DNA of 64,000 bases from Lepidodermella squamata (GCA_047495785.1 JBLDXI010000054.1:2170001-2234000); one strand, 5' to 3'. Shown: positions 1,598-56,430, counted from the first letter of the stretch. A program made the numbers and translations. The notes: a model not told the origin generated them from the letters alone.

Positions 1598-1684
1598 GAA
1601 CTCGGCGCTCTGTCCTCCAAAGTGACGCTCGGAAACGGCACTCCAAACAATAATCAAATATTAACCGATGAATTATCTGTGAAT

Positions 1685-4483: not shown

Positions 4484-4616
4484 TGCGGATGGACAGGGCG
4501 CATAAGTGTCCCTGGCTCCAGATTTATCAATATATATGTGATATATATAACTACTTAGTATCTATATGATAGATACCTAAAAAATTGTAACATGTTGGGA
4601 GCAAAAATAAAACTAA

Positions 4617-5447
4617 CTAACTAACTAACTGACGGTCTCGAAATCGACATCGCATCCGGCAGAACCACATTTTGATGCGCTCTACTGAAAAACCTGTTTT
4701 TACGGCCAGGTCTTCCACTTCCGCCTTCCCCGGGGAAGAATTGGCTAGAAAAGCGCTCCTCAATACGTCAAACTGATCCTTATTCATCGGACGCTTCTTG
4801 TGCTCCATTATTTTGGGGTCCCGATTCCTGAGAAGCCAACCATAAACTTTCCGTCGATTTTCGGACATTTCTCTGGCCACGGAGTAACTGAGTTTCGCTA
4901 GTGATTTATCCTGGTTTTTCCTCCAGGCTTCCAAGTGGCGGCGCAATTCTTCAAGCTGCCAGCTTTCGAATTTCTTATTTGCTGGAGTTGTCTCTGCAAA
5001 TGATTGTCGGCGCTGCTGATCTTGATACATTGCGTGCCATTCAGAGCCTACGGTTCCGCGTCTACGACGACGAAACCACTGACGAACCATCAACTCTTGT
5101 AATCCGGTGACATCTGCCAATTCCTTAATATCTTTCACTGCAGGATAGGCGTTGGCTTCGAATGCGTTGGCAAGTATTTCCTGTTGCGCTCTAGATGTGT
5201 AATATCGAGATTTAGCCCTTGCAACCGCTATGATCTTAGTGTCGCAACGGCGGTGGACCCAATTATAGACACGTTCCTTATCCTCTCCGATTTCTTCAGC
5301 TAAACGTTTGCTCATTACGCAGAGTCGCTCATCGGTACGGTTTTTCTGCCAATCTTCCAGCCTCTTCTGCATTATTTCAAGCTGCCATGGCTCATATCCA
5401 AGCCGCGGGCCATACTTCTTCCGCAGTTTTTCCTTGCCAACACTCAT
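4617..5447 (-). CDS. Multi-homeobox gene copy 1, truncated to 4 homeodomains by CR1 insertion (276 aa)
   Basis: ATG and HD1-HD4 open; the stop comes from the antisense (AACT)n tail; functional status unknown. Confidence 0.75.
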   Translation of the reverse strand: MSVGKEKLRKKYGPRLGYEPWQLEIMQKRLEDWQKNRTDERLCVMSKRLAEEIGEDKERVYNWVHRRCDTKIIAVARAKSRYYTSRAQQEILANAFEANAYPAVKDIKELADVTGLQELMVRQWFRRRRRGTVGSEWHAMYQDQQRRQSFAETTPANKKFESWQLEELRRHLEAWRKNQDKSLAKLSYSVAREMSENRRKVYGWLLRNRDPKIMEHKKRPMNKDQFDVLRSAFLANSSPGKAEVEDLAVKTGFSVERIKMWFCRMRCRFRDRQLVS

Positions 5448-5590
5448 TTGTTATTATGAAACCTAGTTCAGAAAGAATGCAATTTTACGACATCTGTCAA
5501 TGAATCGTTTCAACTTATAAAATAACGTTCGTCCATTATTTTAAAGAAGAAGGTATTTTATCGGATTGTTTAATCGGCATCTAGCAATAT

Positions 5591-5650
5591 CAGCTTGCCG
5601 AGAATAAACCGCATATGCGGTGAAACCCAGTTCACTCCATGCGCATTTCA
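5591..5650 (-). promoter_or_regulatory. Conserved 5' non-coding exon/promoter block of homeobox genes (copy 1)
   Basis: Block with splice donor and palindrome ACCGC-N4-GCGGT recurs at ~14871-14930, ~18412-18470 and ~23545-23600. Confidence 0.55.
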
Positions 5651-5704
5651 CTATTCTTGAGGGAATTTCGCGGCGTACAGAATCTCCCGTATGATTCTAG
5701 GGCC

Positions 5705-7300
5705 TACTAGTGCGCCAGTCGATCTACAAGGTCGTCTATGAAAATGCTGAAGAGCAAGGGCGAAAGTGGGTCACCCTGCTTGACACCGATGGACACCCGA
5801 ACTCGTTGTTAGAGAAGACGAAGGCATCGTAGCTCGTGTACACCGATGACGCGAATGAAGGCTTCGGGGACGCCGCGACAACGGAGCTTCTCGAGCAGCA
5901 TCCAGTGCGAGACAGAGTCGAACGCGGCGGAGGAATCGATGAACGCGCAAAAGACAGCCTCGCGCTTCAGACTGCTAGCGTTTTGTTATAACTCTCCATT
6001 TGACGGTATCTAAATGCTTGTGCGGTGAAACTATTAACGCCGCCGTATTTGCATGCTTGAGTGTCCCTGCGTATTGCCGGTTACGGTAAATTACGTATAA
6101 CTGCGTCGATCTTAGATGATCCCGGTACAATGCCAAATTGTTCGATATCGAGTGGTGAGAAGAGCCACTTTCGTAGGCGCTTTTCGCACAGCCTAGAAAA
6201 TAATTTCGCGACACGTTTCTGAAGGCAAATTGGCCTATAGTTTTCTACGTCTGACCTGATTCTGCCTATCTTGAAAATGATGGCGATTATAATTATAATT
6301 GGAAGCAGATGATGGCGTCATTCCAGTTTGATGGGAAAGCACCCTCGCTGAACACGCGCGTGTAGAGAATGACGAGGTAGTGCGCGAGCTTGTCCATGTC
6401 GGACGATGTCGGATTGTCTCTGATGTCGGCAAAGGAAAGGTCATCGAGACCGGCAGCTGAGTTGGCGTTGCAGACCGAGAGGCAGTCGCGTACCTCAGTC
6501 TCGGATACTGGACCAACGAGCATACCTTCTTTCGTATTAGGCGCTGTCTCGGCTGTGATTGCTGGTTCCCTTTTGCTGAAACTATTCCACCGCCAGAAAC
6601 TGTCCGTGTCCGATGTTTAGTATCGCGGCGTACGCAGAGATAGCGGTTCCGAAAGGTCGTGTCGGGAAGCGATGAGAGACTCACTGGTGGTTCCCGACAA
6701 TTCACGCCATCTCATAGCCATGCCATTCGGTGCTAGCTTGAATTCGAACAGACTTGTTGTTGACCCAGAGCGAATAAGCGGTGGGATGAGCCGCCGGAGG
6801 AGGTGCTGCCTCGAAAGGCGGGGGCTGGATGCCTTGACCCAGCAGATTGAGAAGGTAGGCACGGTAGGCAAAAGCCGGCGGGTGAAAAGAGGTACAATCA
6901 AGCGTTGAAGGAAGTATCAAAGACAGCTTAGCGTTATTTATACGAAGTCTGGTTGTTGGCGCTTGATTGCGGTTATCCGGGCATGATCGGTGTGAGAAGA
7001 AAAGTCCAAGGCTGCATTAATATGGCCAAGGGACCTCGGTCCCGCCTAGGTGGCGCCAACTCAGGAGGATCCAGTAGTAATGGTTGAGGAGGTGGCGCCG
7101 GCGGTTCCGTCCCTTCTGTCGAGCTGTTAGGTATAGCCGGCTGCAAGCTGCTGGTTGATTCCTACTGCAAGCTGCCGCCAGCGCGAGCTGTGATCTCCGG
7201 GAAGTGATGGTCGAAGTCAGAATCGTCTTCTCGCGATACGGACACAACTTCTTCACCGTCGACGTCCGACGAAGTAGGACCTCCTTTACACCTATCACCC
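5705..7300 (-). mobile_element. Decayed non-LTR retrotransposon (RT domain fragments) interrupted by ~325 bp of unrelated DNA (~5976-6300)
   Basis: SAAGLDDL...FPSNWNDAII (6293-6523), AVFCAFIDSSAAFDSVSH (~5900-5960), GVKQGDPLSPLLFSIFIDDL (~5720-5790); upstream limit approximate. Confidence 0.75.
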
Positions 7301-7560
7301 GTGCTCGCAGGCCGCGTACTTCGTAGTAGTTATTAGTTAGCCTGATGTTCGCACACGGCCGACAGTAAGCCGACAGCCCATGCTCTATTAACCATACGTT
7401 GACAGGAGAGAAGCTCCCGAAACAATAATGAGGCTACTTGAGCTCGATGTTCAAAACGTAGCAAAACGAAAATAATAGTCGCATAGTGATTAATTCGCAA
7501 TTAATGAAATTTGTTCGGAAAGCCAATCGACAAATGCAGTCACGACTCATCAATGATAGA

Positions 7561-7860
7561 GAAAATCGAGGTCGGTGTGGTCGGTGGTCGGACTCCGTTT
7601 CTTGAGGCTGCATCAAATTAGTCTGCTGTGAAATTAGTTTCGCACAACCATGGTGCAAATTTGTATGCAGTCGATTGTAGGCCGTGCATCCAATGATTAT
7701 CTAGGGCCGTGGGAGGTTCCGAAGTAATTGAGGCGGGTGCGAGCTTCACAAGATGCGGATTAAGCGGTGCTGAGGGACTGCAATGTCGACACTCCCGGGA
7801 AAATTGCTCAGTGTGGCTTTGCGTTGAAGCATAGCTATACATAGAGAGCGTAGACTTCAC
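7561..7860. repeat. Duplicated spacer segment of the array unit
   Basis: Similar to ~18968-19270 and partly ~15527-15585; a second shared block is at ~7030-7095 and ~16090-16165. Confidence 0.75.
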
Positions 7861-7927
7861 GCAAGTTTTGACGAAGAAATATTTAAATCTAAACCAAAAT
7901 GATTAAAATTTACTTCATGAAAAAGAT

Positions 7928-9438
7928 TCATTGTCCATCATTTGTTGATGTTTTCTATCTCTTGTTCCTTCGATAATCAAACCACCTCCTGAGACGCTTG
8001 ACACCAACGTTCATAACTGAGGAGAGATTTTCGTAATCTGACTGGTTTGGGCATCGCTTACGTCGACACAGCTCTTCCAATTGTTGAATTTGAAAACGCG
8101 TGAACAACTTTGTCTCTCCTTTTGATCCGATCTTCCCTGAGGATATGCCACTCAGGACGTTTCGCACTTTCGCCGGAGTCAGGTTTGTAACTGATGCCAA
8201 GTGTTCTAGCCGTTTAGCGTAGCGCCTGCACGGAATTGCTGCTTCTTTTTCGAGGATCGCAATTTGCCAGGGCTCTAACGCCCATGTGCGGCGTTTTCCA
8301 CCAATGGCGTTCAGTTTACGACTCTACGAATAATTAATTCGGAAACTACATGGTATATGGCTCAACTTACGTTTTCGACTGTCACTTTGTCGCACAGGCG
8401 AGTATTCGTTTGAATTCTTCTCCTTTGAAACCAACCTGCCACCGTAGACCTTTTGACCTGAAGAGCTCTAGCAAGCTCATCTTTACGCGTCCCTGTAGGC
8501 GCTACATTCACAGCAAATTCCTAATTGTTAAATAATTCAATCAAAAGGATTGAACAACGAATAAAATATTCACTTTTTCAAGAAGTTCAATCTGCTCTTT
8601 CTTCAAATTAATGTTATTCCTTCGACTTGAATTGTCTCGAAATCGAAATCGCATCCGGGCGAACCACATTTTCATTCGTTTTACCGACAAACCTCAGGGC
8701 CAGCTCTTCCAATTCCGCCTTCCCCGGGGAAGAATTGGCTAGAAAGGCGCCCCGCAATATGTCGAACTGCTCCTTTTTCATCCGAGGCTTTTTGCGCTCG
8801 ATATTTTTCGGGCCCCGACTCCTGAGAAGCCAGCGATAAACTGTATTTCGATTTGCGGATATTATTCTGGCAACGGAGTAACTGAGTTTCGCTAGCGATA
8901 TATCCTGGTTTTTCCTCCAGGCATCAAAGCGGTGGCTCAATTCTCCGATCTGCCAGCTCTCGAATTCTCTCTTTGCTGGAGTTTTCACGGTATTTGAAGT
9001 TCGGCGTCGCTGGTCTCGACATCTTGCGAGCCCTTTTGACCCTAGGGTTCCGCGTCTATGACAATGAACCCCCTCGTGAATCCTCAACGCCTGTAATCCG
9101 GTGATAGCTGCCAGTTTCTCAATATCTTTCCCTTCAGGATAGGCGTTGGCTTCGAATGCGTTTGCAAGTGTTTCATTTTGCGTTCTAGATTGGCAATATC
9201 GAGATTTAGTCTTTGCAACCGCCATGTCAGTGTCGCGACGGCAGTAGACCCAACGATAGACACGCTCATTATCCTCTCCGATTTCTTCAGCTAAACGTTT
9301 GCTCACTATGCAGAGTTTCTCATCGTTTCGGTTATTCTGCCAATCTTCTAGTCTCTTCTGCATTATTTCAAGCTGCCAAGGCTCAAATCCAAACCGAGGG
9401 CCATACTGCTTCGGCAGTCCTTCCTTGCCAACACTAAT
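7928..9438 (-). pseudogene. Multi-homeobox gene copy 2 (pseudogene)
   Basis: Exons 9438-8574, 8520-8371, 8323-7928; start codon ATG>ATT; 5-nt deletion frameshift in HD4 (~8695); HD2 helix 3 degenerate (IHEGVH); premature TAG at 7955. Confidence 0.85.
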
Positions 9439-9487
9439 TTGTTATAATCATGAAAAACTTGAGGAAACCTATGTCACAAAAAAAGAA

Positions 9488-12400
9488 GGATCAAACACCG
9501 AAGGTGGGCAGAGGACCCCGAGGAAGCCTGCTGGCGATCAGGGCCAGCAGAGACCGGGGCACCGGGTTCGCAGAGAGGCGTAGTTGCTCGACAGCTTCGC
9601 GGATCGGGAGGACGAAGCGGACAGCGTTGTCGGCGTAACGGCGCTGCGTCTGTTCAAAGAAACGAGGGAGACTTGGAACACCGGGGTGACGTTCGAGGCC
9701 CGAGACTCTGACGCGGTCATCGCGACCGACGTTCAGTATTGCCCGAAGGCAATCGTTCTGAAGGACATCAAGGCGCTTGAGTTGCCGCTTGGGTGCAGTG
9801 CAGAAAACGATGTTGCCATATGTTCTCGTGGTTCGAAGGAGGCTTAGATACGCGGTTCGACGCCACCGGCGAGAAAGGCCCGAGGCTCGACAGACACTGT
9901 GCGATAAATTGCGGGTGCAGCGGGTGATCACGCGGTCCATGTGGGCCTTCCAGGTCAACTTAGCATCGAGATGGACACCAAGAATGCGCATGACTGGTAA
10001 TTGCGGGATTGCCGAGACATCGAGAGTTAGTCGGGCATCGTAGCTGCGTCACGCGAATGGCATCACTTCACTCTTGGAGGCTTTGAACCTTTGCCGCCAC
10101 TCGAGGGCCCACGTTGCCATCCGGTCGATCTCATTATGGGTAGCACGCTCAGCTTCCGGAAAATACACCCCTTCTCCGACAACTGTTAGGTCATCAGCAT
10201 AGGCATCGAGATAACACCCTGGGGCAGGCGGCGCGGTCAGCAGATCTGAAGTATAGACGATATAGAACAGCGGTGACAGCGGCGAGCCTTGCGGTACGCC
10301 GCAGTTGACGATAACCTGCCGACAAAGGAAGCCCGCAACAGAAAGGAACACGAGCCTGCAAGTTGCGATCGCGAAGGAAATCGGTCAGCCACCGAACGAG
10401 GTTTCGAGGAAGCGGCAGTTTAGCAAGCTTGAACGCCAGGCCAGCACTCCACCTGGACGTCCAGGCCAACAGCGATCACTTTTCCGTGTCGAGAACGGGC
10501 AAAGTTAACGGTGTGGGCGACGCGTAGAGGGACATCTGGTGCAGAGTGGTGCGCTCGGAACGCATACTGGTTGTCGGGCAGGGCGTGGTGGCTCTTCAAA
10601 AACTCGCCAAACCAACGCGCCACGATAGACTCCAACAGCTTTCCGTCGACGGGAAACAACGAGATCGGTCGCTGGGACGAGACAGTGCCCAAAGGCTTGC
10701 CAGCTTTCGGCACGGGTATCACAGCAGCCTCCTTCAATTCGAGCAGTACGTAACGCGATCCGAGACTCAGGTTAAACAGGTGCCGGAGGTGGCGCTGCAG
10801 CACCGGTCCACCCCACTTGTAGAAGATGGGACGGCGGGCGGCGATACTCGACAAGACGCAGGAACGGGTCACCGGGAACAGGCATAGGAATTGCAATCAA
10901 CTGCTCGATCAGCGTACGCGAAAATTCGAGACGGTCAGGTGGGCGGCTGTCAACCGGGAAATCGACAGATATTGAGGTCGTATAATGATCGCTGGTGTAT
11001 CTATCGCCAACAATCACTCCACTGCGCAGCAGGCGCAGTGCGGCGTCGTTAAGGACCCAAACATCGAGGGTTGACAAGGTACCAGTGTCGAGGTGAAGGC
11101 GAGTCGGTTTCGGTGAGGGCAAGATCGTGAGGCCGAGGCGGGTTGTAGCATCGTGGAGCGAAAAGCCGCTGGGGTTCCGCTGAAGAAGCACGGGAGGCCG
11201 AGGCGGGCAGCAGCAGCAAACTCTTCGTCAAGCCACCGTTAGACGTCGGGGGACAGTAGCCGGTGATCACACGCACGGCTTATTCCTACGACAGTTAGGC
11301 TGCTCCGAGACGACGATCGTCCCTCTGCGAACCAGGATCGCCGACCCGCCATGTGCGTCGCCAATCAAGGCTTCTACAAGGTCCTGTGCCCTATCACAAC
11401 GGAAGGTAGCATACCCTTGCAAAGAGAAGGAAGTAGGAGTAAAAGAAGGATTCATTAATAAAAAGTGATGAAATTGATCTAGAACACATTAAAACTCAAC
11501 CACTTTGTCATTACTACCGCGGCAGTTCCATTGAGAAAGAAAACGACAGCCTACCATGTTGCGCTGGTGGTAGGCGGGCTAGACATCGGCGCAGCCGGGA
11601 ACAGATGAGTCGCGAGAAAACGACCACGACCGGACCCAAAAGCGGCGACAAATTCGTAGCCGGACCACAAGACCGCAGGAGCGTCTTGACAAGGTCAGTG
11701 ACCTCAACGAAGGCGGTTTTAAGCCGTTTAAGACGCAGGCTAGCAGCCACCTCTTTCGCCTTTCGCCTCAAACTGCTTCAGCAACATGTCCATCATCTCG
11801 AACAGGCGAGCACCATCAGGCGACTGGAACTGGTTACTGATGGCAGGGTTAACAGGCGGTTGTCGCGGGGCAGGTGGTGGCTGTTGACCGATGATGTCTC
11901 GGGTCGCGACCCGGTAAGTACGGCCTTGGGCACGTGTGGGCTTGGCGGGTTGCGGGGTTAACTGCTTCTGGCGAGCAATTCGGGCGCGTTTCGTTTCAGC
12001 GCGGGCAACACGGACCTCCGATTCTTGAATTTTAGCAGCCTTGAACTGGAGACAGCCACGCCACATACTCGAATGAGGAGGCGAACCACACACGGACATG
12101 TGACATGCAGGCTAGAGCTTCACGTGGCGCTTCACAGCCAGCCGTTTTGTGATTAGGCGAGGTGCAGCGACCACACAAGAGATCTTTCTCAGGAACAACG
12201 CAATCGGCCTCGATGTGTCCAAACCGGGCACATCGCATACACTTCGGAGGCAGGAGGCCATCTTTGAGCTCGCGGAATTTGACTCAACGATTCAGGAATT
12301 CAAGGCCGACCGTCAGAGCCTCATCGCGCAGCTTATGTGTCTTATGAACGACGAGCGGAGTGGGTAATCGCCGGGGTGTTGTACAGGCATGTCACGAATC

Positions 12401-13080
12401 TCCACGACGTCCTTGATGTGCTTCAGAAGCTGCTCAGTCGTATAGAACCCGGGCAGCCGAGCGGTAATGACCGACCGACTGTCTTTTTCCGCTTGAGGTG
12501 ACTTCGTGGCTAGGGCATCAGGTTGACCGGGTCGGTGTACGCGAATGGCGGAGCCCCGAAAGGCGCCGGGTGTGAAACCGTCCCGATCCAGAAGGCGTTT
12601 GGCATCGACAGCCGACTTGCAGATGATCCGCAAGCCGCCGCTAGCCATTACGATGACAGTCTCGGGAGTCAGCCACGGGACAGCCGTATAGAGCTGGGGC
12701 TCCAGTTCGCTTCGCCGAACTCCATGCACGTTGTCGATGATGACAGTGCGGAACGCACCGGTGCTTGCAGTCGTGGAAGGCCCGGTCGTAGCACCCGCAG
12801 GAGGAGTACTCCGATTCGGCGGGACGACAGGGGCGACAGGGGCTGTCGGGATTGACGGCGGGGGCTGGTAAGCGGCCACAGACGCGCCACGGTTGACCAG
12901 CGGCGGATCGTCGATGGAGTCATCAGCCGAGTCCATGTGGATCTCGCCAATAACGGACAGGGTCTCTGGACAGTTTTTCGCAACTTTTATTGAGTCGATC
13001 AGTTTTAGCACCTTGGCAACAACAGCGGTGTGAAGGCCTTGTGAAGACCTTGTGAAAGCGACTCAAGTTGAAAGCGCGGG
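9488..13080 (-). mobile_element. Near full-length decayed I/Jockey-like LINE (gag-like ORF1 with CCHC knuckles; APE-RT ORF2)
   Basis: ORF1 ~13011-11700 with CMRCARFGHIEADC and CGRCTSPNHKTAGC knuckles; ORF2 from ATG 11557 (QWNCRG; GGSAIL; YCPP; SDH; RPISL; NQYAFR; QGSPLSP; YADD; LGVHLD) to 9491; many frameshifts. Confidence 0.9.
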
Positions 13081-13176
13081 AATGTCAAAATTTACGCTAA
13101 GAAAAATGTATAGGTATCTAATTTATTATGATTAAAATGTGCAAAAGGGTACTTCGGGAACAAAAGGGAGAAAGAT

Positions 13177-14690
13177 TCAATGTTCATCATATTGTGACGC
13201 TTTTTCCCTGTACCTTCGGTTGCTGAACCAGTTCCTCAGACGCCTAATACCAACGTTCGTAACTGTGGAAAGATTTGTGAAGTCTGACTGGGTTGGCCAA
13301 GACGTACGCCGAAACAGCTCTGACATGTGTTGAAGTTGAGAACGTGTGAAATAGTTCACTCCCTTGGATCCGGTCATTCTTGAGGATATGCCTCGCAGGA
13401 AGCTTCTTACTTTCGCCGGAGTCAGGTTTGTAACCGCTGCCAAGTGTTCAAGCCGCTTGGCGTAGCGCTTGCACGGAACTGCAGCTTCTTTTTCCAGGAT
13501 TTCAATTTGCCAGGGTTCCAACGCCCATTTACGGCGGTCTCCGCCACCAGCGTTTAATTTACGCACCTACAAATAATTAATCCAGAAACTACTTGGTATA
13601 TGACTTAGGCTTACGTTTTCGACTGTCACATTGTCACTCAAGCGAATATTCGATTTATCTCTTCTCCTTTGAAACCAATGGGCTACAGTGGACCTTTTCA
13701 GCTGAAGAGCTTTAGCCAGCTCATCTTTACGCGGCATTGTAGGCGCTACATTTACAGCGAATTCCTAATTGACAAACAATCAAATTTTAGAGATTGAACA
13801 ACGAATAAGACATTCACTTTTTCGAGAATTTTAATCTGCTCTTCGTTTAGAGTTACTTTCTTCCTTCGGCAAGCATGGTCTCGAAATCGCCATCGACTTA
13901 CAGTAAACCAATTTCTGATGCGTTTTACTGACAAGCCTGTCTTTAGGGCCAGATTTTCCACTTCTACCTTTTCCGGGTGAGAGTTGGCAAGATAAGCGCC
14001 CCGCAATATGTCGATCTGCTCCTCATTCATCCAACGCTTCTTGTGCTGAATTATGTTCGGGTCCTGATTTCTGAGAAGCCAACGATAAACTTTCAGTCGA
14101 TTTGCAAACATTTTTCTGGCCACAGAGAAACTGAGCTTCCAGAGCGAAATAGCTTGTGGTTTCCTCAAGGCTTCTGATAAGTGGCGGTGCAATTCTTCAA
14201 TCTGCCAGGGCTGAAATTCCGTGCATGCTGGAATAGTCACGGTCAATGAACGGTGTTGCTTCTCTCGGTATATTGCGCGCCCTTTAGAGCCTAAGGTTGG
14301 GATTCTACGAGTCTGAAACCACTTGCGAATCTTCAACTTCTGTAATCCGGTGACAGCTGCCAGTTCCTCAATATCTTTCCTCCCAGGATAGGCGTTGGCG
14401 TCGAACGCGTTGGTAAGTATTACCTGTTGCGCTTTAGATTTGATGTAATTTCGAGGTTTAGCCCTTAAAACCGCTGTGTCAGTGTTGCGATGACGTTTGA
14501 CCCAACAATAGACACGCTCCTTATCCTCTCCGATTTCTTCAGCTAAACGTTTGCTCATTATGCAGCGTCTCTCATGGTTACAGTTATTCTGCCAATCTTC
14601 TAGCCTCTTCTGCATCACTTCGAGCTGCCAAGGCTCAAATCCAAGCCGGGGGCTACTCTGCTTCCGCAGTTTTTCCTTACCAACACTCAT
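13177..14690 (-). CDS. Multi-homeobox gene copy 3, intact, 470 aa, seven homeodomains
   Basis: Exons 14690-13818, 13764-13615, 13566-13177 joined by phase-0 GT-AG introns of 53 and 48 nt; repeated Q..IL...F....YP......LA..TGL....V..WF...R patterns. Confidence 0.88.
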
Positions 14691-14976
14691 TTGACATAAT
14701 GAAACCTGAGGAAACCTAGATCAGTAAAAATAACGCAAGTCACAAAAACACCACACTCGAAGCAATGAATTGTTTCAGCCCATGAAATAACGTTCGTCCA
14801 TTTTCTGACTTCATTTAAAGACGAAGTAAACTGTCTCTTTTGATTTTATCGGCACCTAGCATTTAGCATTCAGCTTACCGATACTACACCGCTAGTGCGG
14901 GGAAAGCCAGCTCTCTCGATGAGCGCTTCGAACGTGAGAGGAATTTTGACATCGGCGTAACCGATCAACCAAAATA

Positions 14977-15211
14977 CTAATGTTATATGTTCACGAACTG
15001 CTTCGGAGACGTGTCCGAAGTTTTAGTCTCCGAAGTCTCGCTGACCGAAGTTGTAGATTTTCGTTCACAAGCGCGCGCACAACGGACGAATCATGTCACG
15101 CTGGGAAATAGCTTCGGAAATAACGTCACCGAAGATTCACTGGAGTGTTCCGAAGTTTCAAGTTGGGTCTCCGAAGACACCCTCTCCGAAATTAGTTTGT
15201 GGACGCATTAG
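14977..15211. mobile_element. MITE-like insertion with internal CCGAAG repeats
   Basis: Imperfect terminal inverted repeats (ctaatg..gttcacgaact / agtttgtggacgcattag); absent from the homologous upstream region of copy 4 (~18500-18520). Confidence 0.65.
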
Positions 15212-15595
15212 ACGCCATAAAATTCGTCAAGAGGAAATTTTTATTTTTGCCCATATTTAAGGGTCCTCCTTTTACCAGAACCAAGTAGCGGAGCCAGATT
15301 CTCCTCTCAGCAGAACCAAATGTTTGGAATTTTCTAGTGACCTGAAATCACTTTTTGGGTATTTCGCAGGGGTCGAGATTGTCCGCTAAAAAATCACCAT
15401 TAAATTCAGTGTACAATTCAGAACAATATTATGGTAGGTTACCTGAATATGCATTAAATTGTTGACCTTTTTCGAACACATGATGTTAGCGACTACGGCC
15501 ATGGAACGTGAGGTTTCGGAGTATTTGAGCGGTTGCGAGCTTCACAAGGTGCGGATTAAGCGGCGTTGAGGGACTGCAATATCTACGATGACAGT

Positions 15596-15700
15596 CTGCC
15601 AAAGCTCATATCCCAGCCGTGGGCCAATCTTCCTCCTCAGTTCTTCCTAGCCCACACTCATTTGTTATAATGGAAACCTGAGGAAACCTATAGGTCACAA
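15596..15700 (-). pseudogene. Relic 5' end of a seventh homeobox copy
   Basis: ATG at 15661 then MSVG*EELRRKIGPRLGYELWQ, with the conserved acceptor ctatag/gtttcctcag upstream; fused to spacer sequence at ~15585. Confidence 0.75.
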
Positions 15701-16346
15701 AAATAATTTTCGAGTGCCCTGAAATCACGTTTTGGTATTTCTTAGTTGTCACGATCGATCGTACAAAAATCAATATTAATTCAGCGTAACATTCTCTATA
15801 AGGCGGAATGTCCAATCCAGAACTCATACAGCGCCTCGAAATAGTAGAATTATTCAAACAGTTACTCTTGGTATATTTCGACTTGGGTTCCGCTACAGCA
15901 CGTTCCACTCACCGCAAATTTGGTTCCGCTGAAAAAGATATTTGAGTTAATGCATCATACCTAAAATTAGGGGGTAAGGTTACCTAAATATGCATAAAAT
16001 TATCGGCGTGAGACGGCGTTCAACGATGGCTAAGACCTTGTGGGTAGGAAAGTTCAATGTTGTTTTAATATGCCCGAAGAACTTTGTGAAGGACTCGGTC
16101 CCGCCTAAGTAGCGCCACATCAGAAGGATCCGGAAGTGATGGCTGAGGCAGAGGAGCAGGTGGCGTACCTGACACGGGAAATATGCTCGGCATGGCTTGC
16201 GCTGAAGGCAAAGCCGCATAGCGAGCCGAAAGCCGAAAGTCTTGACTAGGAAATATGTAAATCTATAGATTTTTATGCTGTTTTTTACGTTTTATGTAAA
16301 TCAAGAGAAAATGTTAAAATGTAATTCGTGAGAAAGATTCATTGAT

Positions 16347-17822
16347 TCAAGATTCATCTTTCGACGCGTTTTTCATGTTCCTTCGGTTGTCAAACCACAT
16401 CTTGAGAAGCCTGATACCAACGTTCATAACTGAGGACAGATTTTCGTAGTCTGCCTGGGTTGGGCAATGCGTGCGTCGAAACAGCTCTTGCATTTGTTGA
16501 AGTTGAGAATGCGTGAAAAATTTGTTCGCTCCTTTTGATCCGATCCTTCCTGAAGATATGCTTCTCAGGACGCTTCTCACTTTTGCAGGAGTCATGTTTG
16601 TAGCCGATGCTATGTTTTCAATCCGCTTGGCGTAGAGCCTGCACGGAATTGCTGCTTCTTTTTCGAGGATCGCAATTTGCCAAGGCTCTAATCCCAAAAA
16701 GCGACACTCTCTGTCAGCAGCGTCCAATTTACGCATCTAAGAACGCCAAATGAAGAAATTACATTGGGCACGATTGAAGCTTACGTTTTCGAGAGTCACT
16801 TTGTCGCACAAGCGAATATTCGATTTATCTCTCTTCCTTTGAAACCAACGTGCTACAGCAGGCCTTTTCAGCTGAAGCGCTTTAGCAAGCTCATCTCTAC
16901 GCTGCACTGTAGGCGATACATTCACAGCGAATTCCTAATCGACAAATTATTCAATTACAAATATTGGACAACGAATAAGTCATTCACTTTTTCGAGAAAT
17001 TCAATCTGCTCTTCTTTCAAATTGATTTCATTCCTCCGACTTGGATAGTCTTGAGATCGCGATCGCATCCGGCAAAACCACTTTATGATTCGTTTTACAG
17101 ACAATCCTGTCTTTGAGGCCAGCTCTTCCACTTCCGCCTTTCCAGGGGAAGAATTGGCTAGAAAGGCGCCCCGCAGCATGTCGAACTGCTCCTTATTCAT
17201 CCGAGGTTTTCTGGGGTCGACTTTTTTCGGGTCCCGATTCCCGCGAAGCCAACGATGAACTTTGTCTCGATTCGCGGATATTTTCCTAGCCACGGAGAAA
17301 CTGAGCTTACCCGGCGAAATTTCCTGGGTTTTCCTCCATTCTTCCAAGTGGCGGCGCAATTCTTCAACCTGCCAGCTCTCGAATTGTCTCTTCGCTGGAG
17401 TTGTCGCGGTATCTGAAGTTGGGCGTCGCTGTTCTCGATGTCTACGCCAAAGAAACCACTGACGAATCTTCAACTCCTGTATTCCGCTGACAGCTGCCAG
17501 TCCCTTAATTTCTTTCACTGCAGGATAGGCGTTAGCTTCGAATGCGTTGGCAAGTATTTCCTGTTGCGCTATAGATTTGTAATTTTGAGATTCAGCCCTT
17601 ACAACCACCATGTCAGTGTCGCGACGGCAGTTGACCCAGCGATAGACACGCTCCTTATCCTCTCCGATTTCTTCAGCTAAACGTTTGCTCATTATGCAGT
17701 CTCTCATCATTACGGTTCTTCTGCCAATTTTCTAGCCTCTTCTGCATTAATTCATACTGCCATGGCTCATATCCACACCGTGGGCTTTTCTTCTTCCGCA
17801 GCTTTTCCTTGCCAACACTCAT
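16347..17822 (-). pseudogene. Multi-homeobox gene copy 4 (frameshift in HD1; could reinitiate at 17710)
   Basis: Exons 17822-16988, 16934-16785, 16736-16347; frameshifting indel at ~17700; in-frame deletion after HD2; remainder open. Confidence 0.75.
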
Positions 17823-17872
17823 TTGTTATAATGAGACCTAGGTCAGTAAAGAATGCAAGTTTATTACATCTC

Positions 17873-18292
17873 CACTTAAAACCACAGCGCAACACAAAAC
17901 ACCAATTTGCAGCAGGATAAAATTGCAACACAACTTATTTCTGTAACTTGTAAGTTCGATATAAGAAGAAGACATAGGAAAGGGGCAGTTTTTTACGCTC
18001 AATCCGAATATGAAAACCGAAAGGGACGATTTTCAATTTTTACCCGGGTAGTACCCAGTTTTACCCGGTTTTACCCGGTTTTTACCCGGTTTACCCGGTA
18101 CCAACGTCCCTGACATTCAAACAATTACCACGGTCGTATTCCGCGCCCCCGATAACATCTATTGGTATGCCTGAATTATACTTGTTTCACTTAATGCCAA
18201 AAACAAGGTCGTGTGTTGCAAAAATGTGTGCTGCAAAATATTAAATTTTGTGTTGCACTTTGGTTATTTCTGTTACGCTGTGGTGGTGAGCC
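17873..18292. mobile_element. Mutator-like MITE with 9-bp target-site duplication, containing a nested ~90-bp inverted-repeat element
   Basis: TTACATCTC at 17864-17872 and 18293-18301; subterminal inverted repeat ACCACAGCG(C/T)AACA; inner agggacg...cgtccct (~18022-18111) with (TTTACCCGG)n. Confidence 0.7.
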
Positions 18293-19361
18293 TTACATCT
18301 CACCACACTTGAAGGAATGAATTGTTTCAGCTTGTGATATGACGTTGACCCACGACGTGACTCTAAAAGACAAGGAAATTTTATTTGATTGTTTTATCCG
18401 CATGTAGCATTCAGGTTACCGAGAATACACCGCTCGTGCGGTAAAAGCCAGCTCACTTGATGCGCACTCCAAACTTACGGCATCGGCCTAACGGTTCAAT
18501 CAAAATACTTCCAGCCATCAAATTCTGCTAGAGGAATGAATGCTTTTCTTTTACCCATATTGTCCTCCATTTACCAGACCCAAGAAGCGGAACCAAATGT
18601 TGGAGTTTTCTGGTGGCCTGAAATAACGTTTTTGTTATTTATTGGGTGTCAAGATTGGCCGCTAATAAAAATTGGGGACTTTTTTCGAACACTTGCTGTT
18701 CCTCAACAATGAGGTTCCTCGGGCTCTCATTTAGACTATCAGCAGTCCGAACCCCTTTGCCCACAAAATCTAACGAGCCACACAATTGCTGCTCAAATTT
18801 GATAAAGAGAAAAATTGAAAACCTCTCGACGGGGTCCGAAGTTTGCATAAACTGTATAGATACCCTTCTAGCACAATAGAACGTTTTCAAATTCTTATAT
18901 AGCTCAAACAAGGGCCCTGTTCACGTCTCCACTAATGACTGATGGAATTGACAACTTGACTCGGTTGAAAATCGAGGTCGGGGTGTTCGTTTCTTGAGGC
19001 TGCATCGAATTTTAGGCTACTTTGAAATTCGTTTCGAACAGTGGCGCGAATTCGTATGCAGTCGATGGTAGTCCATGGATCTAGTGACTACTACTTCTAC
19101 GGCCGGGAGCTGGAAGGAGGTTTCGCGGATACATGAGGCGGTTGCAAGCTTTACGAGACGCGGATCTAGCGGCGCTGAGGGACTGCAATATCGACACTCC
19201 CGAGAGATTTTCTTGGCAAGGCACTGCGTTATAGCCAAAGTGGCATAGCAAGCCGAAAAAACAGACACATTTCACAAAATGTTATGACTATAAATGTATA
19301 GATTTAAATTAAAAGGATTAAAATGTACTTTGCGAATGAAAGGAAGGAATAAGATTCATTG

Positions 19362-20858
19362 TCAATCATTGTTTGACGCTTTGCTCCGCCTTCGATTATT
19401 AAACCACGTCCTCAGACGCCTGATACCAACGTTCATAACTGAGGAAAGATTTTCATAATCTGACTGCGTTGGGAAACGCTTACGTCGAAACAGCTCCTCC
19501 ATTTTTTCAAGTTGAGAAAACATTAAATAACGCAGCGCTGCTCTTGATTTCATCTTTCTTGAGGATAGACGTTGCAGGATGCATCTCACTTTAGCAGGAG
19601 TCAGATTTGTCACGGATGCTATGTGTTCTAACCGTTTGGCGTAGCGCCTGCACGGAATTGCGGCTTCTTTTTCGAGGATCGCAGTTTGCCAGGGCTCTAA
19701 TGCCCAGTTACGGCGCTCTCCGTCACCGGCGTTCAATTTACGCATCTACGTATGATATGAATTCGGAAATTACATGGTATATATGACTTATGCTTACGTT
19801 TTCGAGAGTCACTTTGTCGCACAGGCGAGTTTTCGTTTGATTTCTTTTCCTTTGAAACCAACCTGCTACCACGGACCTTTTCAGCTGAAGAGCTTTAGCC
19901 AGCTCATCTTTACGCGGCATTGTAGGCGCTACATTTACAGCGAATTCCTAATTGACAAACAATCAAATTTTAGAGATTGAACAACGAATAAGACATTCAC
20001 TTTTTCGAGAATTTTAATCTGCTCTTCGTTTAGAGTTACTTTCCGCTGAACAGGATGGTCTCGAAATCGCTCGCGACTTCCGGCAAACCACCTTCTGATG
20101 CTTTTTACTGACAAACCTGTCTTTCGGGCCAGCTCTTCCACTCCCGCCTTTCCCGGGTAAGGATTGGCTAGAAAAGCGCTCCTCAATATGTCGAACTGAT
20201 CATCATTTATTTTGCGCTTGGATATCTTCCGGTCCCGATTCCTGAGGAGCCAACGATAAACTTTCTGTCGATTTGCCGACATTTTCCTGGCCACAGAGAA
20301 ACTGAATTTACCCAGCGAAGTGTCCTGAGTTTTCTTCCAGGCTTCTAAGTGGTGGCGCAATTCTTCAATCTGGCAACTCTTGAATTCCGTCCTTGCTGGA
20401 GTTTTCACGGTCAATAAAGTTCGGCGTTGCTGCTCTCGGTATATTGCGCGCCCTTTAGAGCCTAAGGTTGCGTTTCTACGAGCCTGAAACCACACGCGAA
20501 CCTTCAACTCCTGTAATCCGGTGACAGCTGCCAGTTCCTCAAAATCTTTCCTCCCCGGATAGGCGTTGGCTTTGAACGCGTTGGCAAGTATTTCCTGTTG
20601 CGCTTTAGATTTAATGTAATTTACAGGTTTAGCCCTTACAACCACCATGTCAGTGTCGCGTCGGCAGTGGACCCAACGATAGACACGCTCCTTATCCTCT
20701 CCGATTTCTTCAGCTAAACGTTTACTCATTTTGCAGTGATCCTCGTTACGATTATTCTGCCAATCTTCTAGCCTCTTCTGCATTACTTCGAGCTGCCAAG
20801 GCTCAAATCCAAGCCGTGGGCTAATCTTCTTCCGTAGTTTTTCCTTGCCAACACTGAT
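19362..20858 (-). pseudogene. Multi-homeobox gene copy 5 (open frame but ATG>ATC; upstream exon lost)
   Basis: Exons 20858-20001, 19947-19798, 19745-19362 all open; next in-frame ATG at 20783 lies inside HD1. Confidence 0.65.
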
Positions 20859-20999
20859 TTGTTAAATAATGGAAACCAGAGGAAACCTAGGTCAATAAAA
20901 AAAATCCGACACTTCACCATGCAGTCGAAGCAATGGATGAATTGTTTCAACTTTTAACATCCTTGTTTATATCTCTAGAAGACGACATGGACAGGAGCA

Positions 21000-21232
21000 A
21001 GGCCGAAGGACATAACTTCGCTCTTGCTAGCATTGAACATTTGGCGCCGTTTGCACGCCCACGGTCGATACGGAGACTTCTGCACGGAAATAAGGTCGAG
21101 CTCCGCTTGGAGATAACGTTGGGCTAAGGGGAACTGCGGCATTTGCCAGCGACAGTCAAGTCATCAGCATACGCTTGCAGCAAAGTGCCATCCACGCTCG
21201 GTGCGGACAATAGATTAGCGGTGTACAAGATA
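21000..21232 (-). mobile_element. RT fragment of the same LINE family as 1-730
   Basis: Encodes ILYTANLLSAPSVDGTLLQAYADDLTV, nearly the same as the peptide at ~391-470. Confidence 0.85.
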
Positions 21233-21888
21233 TTTCGGCTCTTATTTTCGGTAAATTCTAAATTCGAAGTTTATTGTCCCTTAAGTTGTGTGACATGAAA
21301 TAAAAATAGAAATACAAAAGGCGAAAATGTCACCGCCAAACGTAAGGCTCGTGGTGGCTAGCCGAAACGCGCTTGCCAGCTTGAGCGGTAAGTAAACGTA
21401 ACTCGTTCTTCCATGTCGAGTTATGACTTATGATAGGCCAGGGTTGTCCACGAGTCGAAAAATCGAGGCCCGCGCGAGTAAATATCTCCGAAACCGTCGT
21501 CCTGTAGACAAGTTTGTGATAGGCCGGAGAGGCCAAAAATCGGCCACCCCAAATTCCAAAATTTTCTTTCTCTCACTTCTTTCGGCACACAATACGAAGA
21601 GCTAAAAAAACTGATCAAGTTAGAAGTGGAAAATGAACACACCGATACTCGACCAGGTGTGAAACGACGAGGATGTTTAAAGGGGACAGGTCGATTCCAA
21701 AAATAGCCCAGCCATTATTTCTTGAAAACCCTGTATAGCAATCACGCGAAGTTCGAAAGAATCGATTTTCGACAATCCATATCGATCGATTATCGATGTT
21801 TAGAAAATCGATTCGCCTATTCAGAAAAATTATCTTAATTTATCAAATTTATTAGAATTAGGACTTCGTGAACAAAAGGGAGAAAGAT

Positions 21889-23394
21889 TCATTGTTCATC
21901 ATTTTTTGACGGTTTTTTCTTGTTCCTTCGACTGCTGAACCAATTCCTGAGACGCCTGATACCAACGTTCACAACTGTGGAAAGATTTGTGAAGTCTGAC
22001 TGGGTTGGCCAAGACGTACGCCGAAACAGCTCTTGCATGTGTTGAAGTTGAGAACGTGTGAAAAACTTTGTCTCTCCTTTTGATCGGGCCTTTCTTGAGG
22101 ATGTGCCTCGCATGAAGTTTATTACTTTAGCCGGAGTCATGTTTGTAACCGATGCCAAGTGTTCGATCCGTTTGGCGTAGAGCCTGCACGGAATTGCGGC
22201 TTCTTTTTCGAGGATCGCAGTTTGCCAGGGCTCTAATGCCCAATTACGGCGCTCTCCGTCACCGGTGTTCAAATTACGCAACTGAGAAAGTTAAAGTCAG
22301 ATAAATTGAATGGAATACGATATAGGCTTACGTTTTCGAGAGTCACTTTGTCGCACAAGCGAGTATTCGTTTCATTTCTTCTCCTTTCAAACCAACGTGT
22401 CAGGAAAGACCTCTCGAGATTAAGAGCTTTAGCTAGCTCATCTCTACGCTGCACTGTAGGCGCTACATTCAAAGCGAATTCCTATAATTGATCACAAATT
22501 CAATTACAATGATTGAAAAACGAATAAGACATTCACATTTTCGAGAAGTTCAATCTGCTCTTCGTTTAGAGATACTTTCCGCTGAACTGGATGGTCTCGA
22601 AATCGCTGTCGACTTCCGGAAAACCACTTTTTGATGTACAGTCTTGGCAAACCTGTCTTTAGGGCCAGCTCTTCCTCTTCCGCCTTTCCCGGATAGGAAT
22701 TAGCAAGAAAAGCTCTCCTTAATATGTCGAATTGATCATCATTCACCTTACGCTTCTTAGGCTGGATTATTTTCGGGTCCCGATTACTGAGAAGCCAACG
22801 ATGAACTTTCTGTCGATTTGCGGACATTTTTCTCGCCACGGAGTAACTAAGTTTTCCTAGCGAAATGTCCTGTGTTTTCCTCCATTCTTCCAAGTGGCGG
22901 TGCAATTCTTCAATCTGCCAGCTCTTGAATTTCTCATTTGCCGGAGTTGTCTCTGCAAATGAAATTCGGCGTCGCTGATCTCGATATATTGCGAGCCCTT
23001 TAGAGCCTAATAATGCGCGTCTACCACGCGCAAACCAATAGCGAACCTTCAACTCTTGTAATCCGGTGACAGCTGCCAGTTCCTTAATATCTTTCCTTTC
23101 AGGATAGGCGTTGGCTTCGAATGCGTTGGCAAGTATTTCCTGTCTCGCTTTATTTTCTCGAGATTTAGCCCTTGCAACCGCCATGTCAGTGTCGCGACGC
23201 GAGTAGACCCAACAATAGACACGCCGCTCAGTCTCTCCGATTTCTTCTGCTAGACGTTTGCTCATTACGTAGTGTTCCTCGCTACGGTTTTTCTGCCAAT
23301 CTTCTAGCCTCTTCATCATCACTTCGAGCTGCCAAGGCTCATATCCAAGCAGTTGGCTACCCTTCTTCGGCAGTTTTTCCTTACCAACACTCAT
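21889..23394 (-). CDS. Multi-homeobox gene copy 6, intact, 466 aa, seven homeodomains
   Basis: Exons 23394-22537, 22481-22332, 22281-21889; same intron positions and phase as the other copies; upstream conserved block at ~23545-23600. Confidence 0.88.
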
Positions 23395-50024: not shown

Positions 50025-50552
50025 TTCTGTTCCAAGCAAAAACAATGTTCTGCAGGGTTTTTCTAAAATGCACCGCGCATTTCCCTAATTGGCTTGATCA
50101 CCAGCATAGGGCGTGCTAAATGACTCTTAGAGGTGGTTCATCTCAAATGAAGATAATTAGAAATGACAAGAATTCTGCTAGTATCAATAATCAGCTCTGT
50201 TATTCAGATTATTCGAGATTCGAATCGTATCGAACCTTTCATTTATTGGGGCACTCATCTCTTGTCAGTAAGTTGTCCGACCTGTCCATCAGGTTATTTA
50301 AGGTCACATTCGAAGAGTTGCATCGATATCGGAAACCGCAGGGGGCGGGTTCCCAACCTTGGTGTTACAGAAGTTAAATTTGTCTCGGTTGTCACATGAA
50401 AAGATTTTGAATAACTTATTTGTGTCAGCATTCTCGGGCAAAGATCACCTATATGGGCTGTTAACTTCAAGGTTTAATCGATTCGGTTTATCAAATGAAA
50501 AACAGTGTGCAGAAAATCATTCGTGAGATTTATTTAACACAAGTGACTTGTT

Positions 50553-56188: not shown

Positions 56189-56430
56189 GAAACTCTGGCA
56201 GCATTCACCCCTGATACCAAGAAAATCGAGCAGCATTCGGCCCCTATTTCGAGAAAATCGAGCAGCAATCGTCCCCAATTCCGACAAAATCGAGCAGCAT
56301 TCGGCCCCAATTTCGAGAAAATCGAGCAGCAGTCAGCTCCTATGTCGATAAAACCCAGAGCTCCACCGGGACAATTGCGAAATCCGACCAGCAGTCGCCC
56401 TCAATGTTGAGAAAATCGCGCAGCATTCCT
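56189..56430. repeat. Minisatellite, 32-bp unit (GAAAATCGAGCAGCATTCGGCCCCAATTTCGA), ~7 copies degenerating at the ends
   Basis: Units start at 56221, 56253, 56285 and 56317. Confidence 0.9.

What the first reader, a model, noticed from the sequence alone, without database searches (positions are those of the whole stretch)
4650..23060. Paralogs differ most at the base-contacting residues of recognition helices
Seen (x47-W48-F49-x50-x51-x52-R53). HD2: QWFRRRR, KWFQTRR, QWFLWRR, VWFQARR, YWFARGR. HD4: MWFCRMR, NWFTVSR, KWFCRMR, RWFAGSR, KWFSGSR. HD7: RWFDYRR, NWFSNRR, MWFDNRR, TWFNNRR, NWFSSRR. W48/F49/R53 and helices 1-2 (NAFEANAYP, LAAVTGLQ) stay nearly constant. Known: positions 47, 50 and 51 set HD specificity and N51 is normally near-invariant; here it survives only in some HD7s. 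Inference: diversifying selection on DNA recognition, as in KRAB-ZFP or PRDM9 finger arrays. This could be a homeodomain-based system tracking fast-evolving targets such as transposons or satellites.
Basis: partly seen in the sequence, partly recalled or inferred. Interest (0 to 1): 0.82.

Follow-up and report, generated by a model that had tools for sequence, protein, structure and literature searches.

The report
Multi-homeodomain gene array, hypervariable DNA-reading residues
Six neighbouring copies of an animal gene encode proteins made of seven homeodomain-type modules, and the copies differ fastest, faster than neutral drift, at the residues that normally read DNA bases, much as in fast-evolving zinc-finger families, though expression and DNA binding are untested.

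Summary
Window 4617-23394 (minus strand) holds six tandem paralogs of a three-exon gene. Its product is about 466 aa with pI about 10.4 and has seven homeodomain (HD)-like units.

- **Where the variation sits:** in the four Pfam-recognised HDs (HD2, 4, 5, 7) it concentrates at the classical base-contact positions. Positions 47, 7, 50 and 54 rank highest of 60. W48, F49 and R53 never change. N51 survives only in HD7 of three copies.
- **Faster than neutral:** my own codon-model fits give omega about 3 at positions 47/50/51/54, against 0.7 elsewhere (LRT 34, p 6e-9). This holds without the damaged copies, with a rate of its own for those codons (p 0.005), in a tree-free count against introns, and in an unsupervised M1a/M2a test (p 2e-8).
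- **Limits of the signal:** it comes from HD2 and HD4. HD5 and HD7 are not significant.
- **State of the copies:** only c3 and c6 are intact. The damaged copies stayed free of stop codons far longer than neutrality allows.

Diversifying selection is supported. Targeting of transposons or satellites is untested, and no RNA data exist. The scan noted similar arrays elsewhere in this genome. I rate it a new variant of a known kind.

The parts
21889..23394 (-). Copy c6, intact. Exons 22537-23394, 22332-22481 and 21889-22281; two phase-0 introns of about 50-55 nt. 466 aa, seven HD-like units.
   Evidence: ORFs and splice motifs. Pfam Homeodomain on exons 1, 2 and 3. Conceptual protein. pI 10.2.
19362..20858 (-). 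Copy c5. The start codon is ATC instead of ATG, and the next Met is at 20783. The rest is open. Exons 20001-20858, 19798-19947, 19362-19745.
   Evidence: A read unitig covering 20801-21000 shows no differences. The frame stays stop-free despite about 136 substitutions, P about 0.003.
16347..17822 (-). Copy c4. A 2-nt deletion in HD1 near 17697 shifts the frame; an alternative ATG lies at 17710. Exons 16988-17822, 16785-16934, 16347-16736.
   Evidence: A unitig covering 17670-17900 shows no differences. A MITE sits 58 nt upstream.
13177..14690 (-). Copy c3, intact. Exons 13818-14690, 13615-13764, 13177-13566. 470 aa.
   Evidence: pI 10.5.
7955..9438 (-). Copy c2, a pseudogene. Start is ATT, HD2 carries W48G/F49V, HD4 has a 5-nt deletion, and the C-terminus is shortened.
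4620..5447 (-). Copy c1. Exon 1 is open through HD4, then cut off by a LINE insertion.
   Evidence: The junction carries a (GTTA)n run at about 4600-4620.
1622..4483 (+). Open 953-aa LINE ORF (endonuclease plus reverse transcriptase). The element ends at about 4620, inside c1.
   Evidence: Pfam RVT_1 and Exo_endo_phos_2.
9491..13011 (-). Decayed non-LTR retrotransposon between c3 and c2, ending just upstream of c2.
   Evidence: Broken RT ORFs, RVT_1 at 10420-10896.
17880..18284 (.). High-copy MITE-like element, about 405 nt. It has 34-nt terminal inverted repeats and internal 10-11-nt repeats, and lies immediately upstream of c4.
   Evidence: Inverted and direct repeats. Summed unitig depth is 1100-1900 here against about 60 on single unitigs.

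Best explanation
This is a lineage-specific tandem family of genes that is continually gaining and losing copies. The proteins are very basic and are built almost entirely of seven homeodomain-type three-helix modules.

Shown:
- The fold-forming residues and the phosphate-contacting R53 are kept by purifying selection.
- The exposed face of the recognition helix (positions 47, 50, 54, partly 51) and the N-terminal arm (positions 5-7) are driven apart between paralogs by diversifying selection. This is strongest in HD2 and HD4.
- Gene conversion homogenises the rest of the gene.

Inferred:
- These residues contact DNA bases as in canonical homeodomains.
- Each paralog therefore reads a different composite DNA site through several modules in a row, in the way polydactyl zinc-finger arrays do.
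- Copies are made, diversified and discarded as their targets change.

The identity of the targets is unknown. Repeats are one candidate.
For: - **Architecture and homeodomain identity:**. AlphaFold gives four three-helix units for exon 1. Foldseek matches DUX4 and other homeodomains at TM 0.85-0.93 by target.
- **Position-specific hypervariability:** permutation P is 2e-4 or lower in all three copy sets tested. No random 4-position set out of 30,000 beats 47/50/51/54.
- **Faster than neutral:**
  - Minimum changes per site at codon positions 1+2 of the 16 contact codons are 1.06-1.22, against 0.56-0.66 in introns and 0.44-0.52 at 4-fold sites.
  - The fixed-sites codon model gives omega 2.98 against 0.71, LRT 33.8.
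  - Omega stays at 3.0-3.9 without c2, without c2+c4, and without c1+c2+c4.
  - With a rate of its own for the 16 codons, omega is 3.6, p 0.005.
  - Neutral simulation reaches at most LRT 7.4 in 300 replicates.
  - M2a beats M1a, LRT 35. The top sites are HD4:54, HD2:51, HD4:50, HD2:47, HD2:50, HD1:50/51/47, HD4:7, HD2:7 and HD7:5.
- **Not CpG hypermutation:** CpG observed/expected is 1.21, and the CGA codons at R52/R53 are unchanged.
- **The genes are, or recently were, functional:**
  - Controls give omega 0.35 at 48/49/52/53 and 0.54 in helices 1-2.
  - Splice sites are conserved in all five full copies.
  - Frames stayed stop-free with P 0.0005-0.014 under neutrality.
- **The two intact copies:** they differ at 13 of 16 contact positions against 32% overall, Fisher p 5e-5.
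- **A related 8-HD family from other assemblies:** it shows the same tendency, P about 0.01.
Against: - No RNA run holds the locus, so expression and the splice model are unverified.
- Only two of six copies are intact.
- N51, the most conserved DNA-contacting residue of homeodomains, is absent from HD2, HD4 and HD5. Canonical docking is therefore not assured.
- Backbone-face positions 43/46/55/57 evolve at omega about 1.
- HD5 and HD7 show no significant excess.
- Only six sequences were available, and they carry evidence of gene conversion. My codon model is home-made and is not PAML or HyPhy.
Confidence: 0.55

Rival explanations
1. The same exposed helix-3 face is under diversifying selection, but it binds something other than DNA bases. 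Candidates are a protein partner, RNA, or a parasite-encoded factor. On this view the modules have given up canonical DNA reading.
For: - N51 is lost in HD2, HD4 and HD5.
- Backbone-face positions are near neutral.
- Other selected sites lie off the DNA face: HD1:26 and linker column 12.
Against: - R53, W48 and F49 are invariant, and the proteins have pI above 10 with arginine-rich third helices.
- The top-ranked positions 47, 50, 54 and 7 are exactly the known DNA specificity determinants.
Confidence: 0.2
2. Relaxed constraint only. The family is decaying, and the surface residues of helix 3 simply drift once DNA binding no longer matters.
For: - Four of six copies are damaged.
- Gene-wide omega is 0.6-0.76, and about 62% of codons fit omega = 1.
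- Earlier notes of the scan describe mostly decayed arrays elsewhere in the genome.
Against: - Drift cannot push omega above 1. Here omega is about 3, and omega = 1 is rejected.
- The contact codons change about twice as fast as introns.
- Frames stayed open far longer than neutrality allows.
Confidence: 0.1
3. Statistical artefact. Gene conversion lowers the apparent synonymous and intron divergence, or multi-nucleotide mutations or a local mutation hot spot inflate dN. On this view omega > 1 does not reflect faster adaptive substitution.
For: - Segment trees conflict: c3+c5 has 94% support in HD1-2, and c3+c6 has 99% in HD6-7.
- Several contact codons differ by 2-3 nucleotides.
Against: - I used per-segment trees, and the tree-free test agrees.
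- With a rate of its own for these codons, omega is still 3.6, p 0.005.
- Neighbouring codons 48/49/52/53 are conserved, so no local hot spot is present.
- If conversion spares only these codons, that is itself selection for diversity.
Confidence: 0.1

Closest known systems
C. elegans CEH-100 / CEH-99 multi-homeodomain genes (Hench et al. 2015, PMC4448998; Burglin and Affolter 2015, PMC4901127)
   Same: The proteins consist of many tightly packed, divergent homeodomains (12 in CEH-100, 4 in CEH-99). They are lineage-specific, lack orthologs in sister species, and lie in duplication-rich regions.
   Different: Those are single genes, not a six-copy tandem array. No site-specific positive selection at contact residues is reported in the passages I read. 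I did not test sequence relatedness to the genes here.
Mammalian fast-evolving PRD-like homeobox arrays (ETCHbox: LEUTX, TPRX, ARGFX, DPRX; Obox; DUX) (PMC8208926)
   Same: - They show tandem duplication, gene loss and gene conversion, with positive and relaxed selection together.
- Some selected sites lie in the N-terminal arm (including residue 7) and in the recognition helix.
- DUX4 homeodomains are the best solved-structure matches here.
   Different: - They have one or two homeodomains per protein, and N51 is kept.
- Selected sites are spread over the protein, not focused on 47/50/54.
- Identity to DUX4 is only 22-25% in the Foldseek alignments, so this is fold and class-level similarity, not orthology.
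KRAB zinc-finger and PRDM9 arrays
   Same: Each protein carries an array of small DNA-reading modules. The genes sit in tandem clusters with rapid gain and loss of copies, and omega exceeds 1 at the base-contacting residues while scaffold residues stay fixed. This comparison rests on my own knowledge, not on a tool result.
   Different: The fold is different (homeodomain, not C2H2). Pfam finds no effector domain such as KRAB or SET. Targets are unknown.
Drosophila OdsH (Odysseus) (reviews PMC3335601, PMC10917504)
   Same: It is a duplicated homeobox gene with a rapidly evolving homeodomain.
   Different: It has a single homeodomain and is a single gene. I found these papers by search and saw only their titles and abstracts.

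Membership tests
Homeodomain (Pfam PF00046) | Profile match above the curated cut-off | tested here: met
   Exon 1 of c6, c3 and c1 scores 67-78 bits with two stretches each (HD2, HD4). Exon 3 scores 45.9 bits (HD7). The cut-off is 22.9. The 3' part of HD5, which is split by an intron, scores 21.8 bits.
Homeodomain (Pfam PF00046) | Three-helix helix-turn-helix fold | tested here: met
   AlphaFold of exon 1 gives four three-helix units with core pLDDT 80-90. Foldseek gives TM 0.85-0.93 by target to DUX4-HD2, Paired and Aristaless. For HD6-HD7 the model is poor (pLDDT 56), so that part is inconclusive.
Homeodomain (Pfam PF00046) | Signature residues W48, F49, R53 | tested here: met
   These are invariant in HD2, 4, 5 and 7 of all copies, except W48G/F49V in HD2 of pseudogene c2. 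HD1 and HD3 keep W48 but have V/L49. HD6 has no W48.
Homeodomain (Pfam PF00046) | Asn51 | tested here: not met
   Position 51 reads, in copy order:
- HD2: R, C, T, W, A, R.
- HD4: R, R, V, R, G, G.
- HD5: R in all copies.
- HD7: Y, N, N, N, S.
N is present only in HD7 of c3, c4 and c5.
Homeodomain (Pfam PF00046) | Sequence-specific DNA binding | not testable with these tools
   This needs SELEX, PBM or DAP-seq.
TALE-class homeodomain | Three-residue extension between helices 1 and 2 | tested here: not met
   Homeobox_KN hits HD4, but the F20-W48 spacing in HD2/4/5/7 is canonical. HD1 and HD3 carry 1-2 extra residues, not three.
Arms-race DNA-binding arrays (KRAB-ZFP / PRDM9 type; 'works like', not membership) | omega > 1 confined to base-contact residues, with a conserved scaffold | tested here: met
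   Omega is about 3 at 47/50/51/54, against 0.35 at 48/49/52/53 and 0.54 in helices 1-2.
Arms-race DNA-binding arrays (KRAB-ZFP / PRDM9 type; 'works like', not membership) | Effector or repressor domain attached to the array | tested here: not met
   Pfam finds only homeodomain-type matches in the exons.
Arms-race DNA-binding arrays (KRAB-ZFP / PRDM9 type; 'works like', not membership) | Binding to transposons, satellites or other fast-evolving DNA | not testable with these tools
   There are no binding data and no RNA data.
Multi-homeodomain proteins of CEH-100 type | Four or more tightly packed, divergent homeodomains in a lineage-restricted gene | tested here: met
   The protein has seven units in 466 aa. 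The word-based search found no close relatives. The exhaustive search found one protein at E up to 1e-30, at 26% identity.

The most novel reading that the evidence does not exclude
This genome runs a 'polydactyl homeodomain' system that plays the part KRAB zinc-finger genes play in tetrapods. By this scan's own notes there are several tandem arrays elsewhere in the genome. It would be a large, constantly renewed family of multi-homeodomain proteins whose base-reading residues are selected to keep up with changing repeats (LINEs, MITEs, satellites) or with other selfish DNA.
Probability: 0.2. Interest if true: 0.85.

Novelty: new variant of a known kind. Interest (0 to 1): 0.64.

Why it matters
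Homeodomains are the textbook case of a DNA-binding domain whose specificity residues are frozen across animals. This is a family in which positions 47, 50 and 54 are the fastest-changing residues, in several modules of one protein and across tandem paralogs. If it holds up, it shows that homeodomains can be used as an evolvable, modular recognition array in the way C2H2 zinc fingers are.

It also offers natural variants for working out how residues 47/50/51/54 set specificity when N51 is absent. And it gives a concrete candidate for genome-defence or early-embryo regulators in an invertebrate lineage.

Tried and rejected
- **Word-based protein search with c6 exon 1:** no hit.
- **RtcB search to name the organism:** identity is 84-89% to animals of many phyla, with Brachionus among the best hits. 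The taxon stays unresolved.
- **Sequencing runs:** one DNA holder was found, probably the source sample, and no RNA run. The reads could only confirm that the c4 frameshift region and the c5 ATC are real.
- **AlphaFold of exon 3 (HD6-HD7):** confidence is too low to judge HD6.
- **hhalign between unit types:** HD1~HD3 and HD2~HD4 match at 98% probability, which points to an internal duplication of a two-unit module. The link between atypical and canonical units is weak (24% or less, except HD5~HD6 at 90%). That the atypical units derive from homeodomains rests on the phmmer alignment to HD1-HD2 of the 8-HD relatives and on the predicted fold.
- **A first joint optimisation of many partitions:** it timed out. 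I replaced it with profile likelihoods on fixed branch lengths, which reproduce the joint fit.
- **CpG hypermutation:** rejected.
- **TALE class:** rejected.
- Exons were searched by reference only. Exons were joined only inside local scripts for the codon alignment.
Full report
**What is there**

The window is animal DNA. It has short introns of about 50 nt, LINEs, and an RtcB gene that is 84-89% identical to those of many phyla, so the species is not resolved. Between 4617 and 23394 the minus strand carries six head-to-tail paralogs, which I call c1 to c6 in order of rising coordinate. Conserved splice motifs define three exons and two phase-0 introns:
- Donor 1 is GAAAA(A/T)|GTGAAT, inside helix 1 of the fifth unit.
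- Acceptor 1 is TAG|GAATT.
- Donor 2 is GAAAAC|GTAAG.
- Acceptor 2 is (C/T)AG.

These are found in all five full-length copies. The conceptual products of the intact copies are 466 aa (c6) and 470 aa (c3), about 55 kDa, with pI 10.2-10.5.

**The seven units**

Each protein has seven units of about 60 residues.
- HD2, HD4, HD5 and HD7 are recognised by Pfam Homeodomain.
- HD1, HD3 and HD6 are atypical, with helix 1 reading E-P/S-W-Q. HD1 and HD3 keep W48 but not F49. Only HD1 and HD3 were modelled with useful confidence.
- AlphaFold models exon 1 as four three-helix bundles. Foldseek matches DUX4, Paired, ZHX and other homeodomains.
- The model of exon 3 is too poor to judge HD6.
- hhalign shows HD1~HD3 and HD2~HD4, so the N-terminal half arose by internal duplication of a two-unit module.

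**State of the copies**

| Copy | State |
|---|---|
| c3, c6 | Intact |
| c1 | Open through HD4, then cut by a LINE whose 953-aa endonuclease/RT ORF is still open |
| c2 | Pseudogene: ATT start, W48G/F49V in HD2, 5-nt deletion in HD4 |
| c4 | 2-nt deletion in HD1; a high-copy MITE lies 58 nt upstream of its start |
| c5 | ATC in place of the start codon |

- Short-read unitigs of the only public run that holds this DNA reproduce the c4 and c5 lesions without a difference.
- Only c1, c3 and c6 share about 250 nt of upstream sequence.
- The frames of c1, c4 and c5 have stayed free of stop codons over roughly 84-151 substitutions on their own branches. Under neutrality that has P about 0.001-0.014. 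Their damage is therefore recent, or it is tolerated.

**The observation**

I aligned the six copies codon by codon and numbered each unit from W48. The table shows:
- W48, F49 and R53 are invariant.
- Helices 1-2 are nearly constant.
- Position 51 is Asn only in HD7 of c3, c4 and c5.

Averaged over the four canonical units, the most variable of the 60 positions are 47, 7, 50 and 54. These are the classical major-groove contacts and an N-terminal-arm contact, by established homeodomain structural knowledge.

As the a priori set I used 47/50/51/54. For the a priori set:
- Mean pairwise amino-acid difference is 0.74, against 0.32 at the other HD columns. Permutation P is 2e-4 or lower in all three copy sets tested, and no random position set matched it with all six copies or with c3/c5/c6.
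- The two intact copies differ at 13 of 16 such positions, against 32% overall. Fisher p is 5e-5.

**Selection or relaxation?**

Gene-wide omega is high: 0.6 by Nei-Gojobori and 0.76 by maximum likelihood. The contact codons nevertheless exceed neutral expectation by every measure I could apply.
1. **Tree-free count.** The minimum number of changes per site at codon positions 1+2 of the 16 contact codons is 1.06-1.22. It is 0.56-0.66 in introns and 0.44-0.52 at four-fold sites. Mann-Whitney p is 1e-3 to 6e-6.
2. **Fixed-sites codon model.** I wrote a GY94-type model with F3x4 frequencies, a shared synonymous rate and separate trees for four gene segments. Separate trees were needed because the topologies conflict: c3+c5 has 94% support in HD1-2, and c3+c6 has 99% in HD6-7. 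The joint fit gives omega 2.98 at the contact set and 0.71 elsewhere. The LRT against omega = 1 is 33.8, p 6e-9.
3. **Without the damaged copies.** Dropping c2, c2+c4, or c1+c2+c4 leaves omega at 3.0-3.9 and the LRT at 24-36.
4. **A rate of its own for the 16 codons.** Omega is still 3.6, p 0.005.
5. **Calibration.** 300 neutral simulations on the fitted trees never exceed LRT 7.4 or omega 1.74. None of 30,000 random four-position sets beats the a priori set, and the best random sets contain 7, 47, 50, 51 and 54.
6. **Unsupervised test.** M2a beats M1a, LRT 35.1, p 2e-8. The classes are about 4% of codons at omega about 5, 62% at omega 1, and 33% at omega 0.13. A per-site scan ranks HD4:54, HD2:51, HD4:50, HD2:47, HD2:50, HD1:50/51/47, HD4:7, HD2:7 and HD7:5 among its top sites.
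7. **Controls.** Positions 48/49/52/53 give omega 0.35. Helices 1-2 give 0.54. The backbone-face set 43/46/55/57 gives 0.98.
8. **CpG.** Observed/expected CpG is 1.21 in the window, and the CGA Arg codons at positions 52/53 do not change. CpG hypermutation is therefore not the cause.

Broken down:

| Set | omega | p |
|---|---|---|
| HD2, 47/50/51/54 | 5.6 | 4e-8 |
| HD4, 47/50/51/54 | 3.8 | 1.5e-5 |
| HD5, 47/50/51/54 | 1.3 | not significant |
| HD7, 47/50/51/54 | 1.7 | not significant |
| Position 47, four HDs | 3.3 | 2.5e-4 |
| Position 50, four HDs | 3.1 | 1.3e-3 |
| Position 51, four HDs | 1.85 | 0.11 |
| Position 54, four HDs | 3.6 | 1.7e-4 |

**Relatives**

- The word-based search found nothing.
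- The exhaustive search found 401 proteins at E up to 1e-3, but only one at E up to 1e-30, and that at 26% identity.
- The informative hits are unnamed proteins from ENA assemblies. P0003, P0005, P0010 and P0013 are 478-555 aa; Pfam finds eight homeodomain stretches in the two I scanned, P0005 and P0013, and the alignment shows eight W48 columns across the set. Most end in a short conserved acidic motif. P0013 sits next to a 515-aa paralog.
- Their HD1-HD2 aligns with the atypical HD1 plus HD2 of the window genes. That supports a homeodomain origin for the atypical units.
- In that family N51 is also mostly absent, and 47/50/51/54 are again more variable than average, P about 0.01.
- Mammalian hits are mostly mis-joined DUX-type arrays.
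- Earlier notes of this scan report several more arrays of seven- and eight-homeodomain genes elsewhere in this genome, mostly decayed. One reports faster-than-neutral change at residue 50 only. These were leads, not evidence. In the array studied here, positions 47 and 54 are as strong as 50.

**How it most likely works**

Shown:
- The scaffold is conserved.
- A hypervariable surface, changing faster than neutral, sits on helix 3 and the N-terminal arm.
- Copies turn over rapidly, helped by transposon insertions.
- Gene conversion acts between copies.

Inferred:
- The surface is the DNA-reading surface, so the paralogs differ in DNA specificity.
- Several modules in a row could read long composite sites.

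Points in favour of DNA binding are the invariant R53, the arginine-rich third helices, and pI above 10. Points against are the missing N51 and the near-neutral backbone-face positions.

The proposed targets (transposons, satellites) are plausible by analogy with KRAB zinc-finger genes and OdsH. Nothing here tests them.

**Comparison with what is known**

- Multi-homeodomain proteins exist. CEH-100 has 12 homeodomains, is lineage-specific, and was called the most extreme case (PMC4448998, PMC4901127).
- Fast-evolving tandem homeobox genes with positive selection also exist. In ETCHbox genes a few selected sites lie in the N-terminal arm and one in the recognition helix, together with gene conversion and relaxed selection (PMC8208926).

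What I did not find described is the combination seen here: a tandem array of polydactyl homeodomain genes, loss of N51, and omega > 1 focused on 47/50/54 in more than one module. I therefore rate it a new variant of a known kind.

**Limits**

- Only six sequences were available, and two are intact.
- There are no expression data.
- The codon models are my own, not PAML or HyPhy.

Noticed in passing
window 1622-4620 (+): A LINE with an uninterrupted 953-aa endonuclease/reverse-transcriptase ORF. Its 3' end abuts a (GTTA)n run (minus-strand reading) and truncates homeobox copy c1 after HD4. It looks like a recent insertion, and the element may still be active.
   Followed up: partly
window 17880-18284: A MITE-like element of about 405 nt, with 34-nt terminal inverted repeats and an internal run of 10-11-nt TTTACCCGG-type repeats. 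Summed unitig depth is 1100-1900 here against about 60 on single unitigs, so it is a very high-copy repeat in this genome. It sits 58 nt upstream of c4.
   Followed up: partly
window 28501-30882 (+), 47661-50045 (-), 50553-52934 (-): Three intronless ORFs of about 793 aa with an ANF_receptor ligand-binding domain. They look like paralogous receptor genes scattered around the homeobox array.
   Followed up: no
L002:181-5181 (P0001, ENA ERZ27289317): A single 1666-aa ORF on a metagenome contig with 16 Pfam homeodomain stretches. That is more than the 12 of C. elegans CEH-100, which a 2015 review called the most extreme case.
   Followed up: partly
L001:10001-13749 (ENA ERZ26273096): Two tandem single-exon genes of 511 and 515 aa. 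Pfam finds eight homeodomain stretches in the 511-aa product (P0013). Both share a conserved acidic C-terminal motif of the V-E-I-K-M-E-P type, which resembles a sumoylation consensus.
   Followed up: no
window 56198-56331: A tandem repeat of a 32-nt unit, 4.2 copies, 84% matches.
   Followed up: no
window 13177-14690 vs 19362-20858 vs 21889-23394: The paralogs are mosaics. Intron 1 and HD1-2 group c3 with c5, while HD6-7 groups c3 with c6 at 99% support. This indicates gene conversion or unequal crossing-over within the array.
   Followed up: partly
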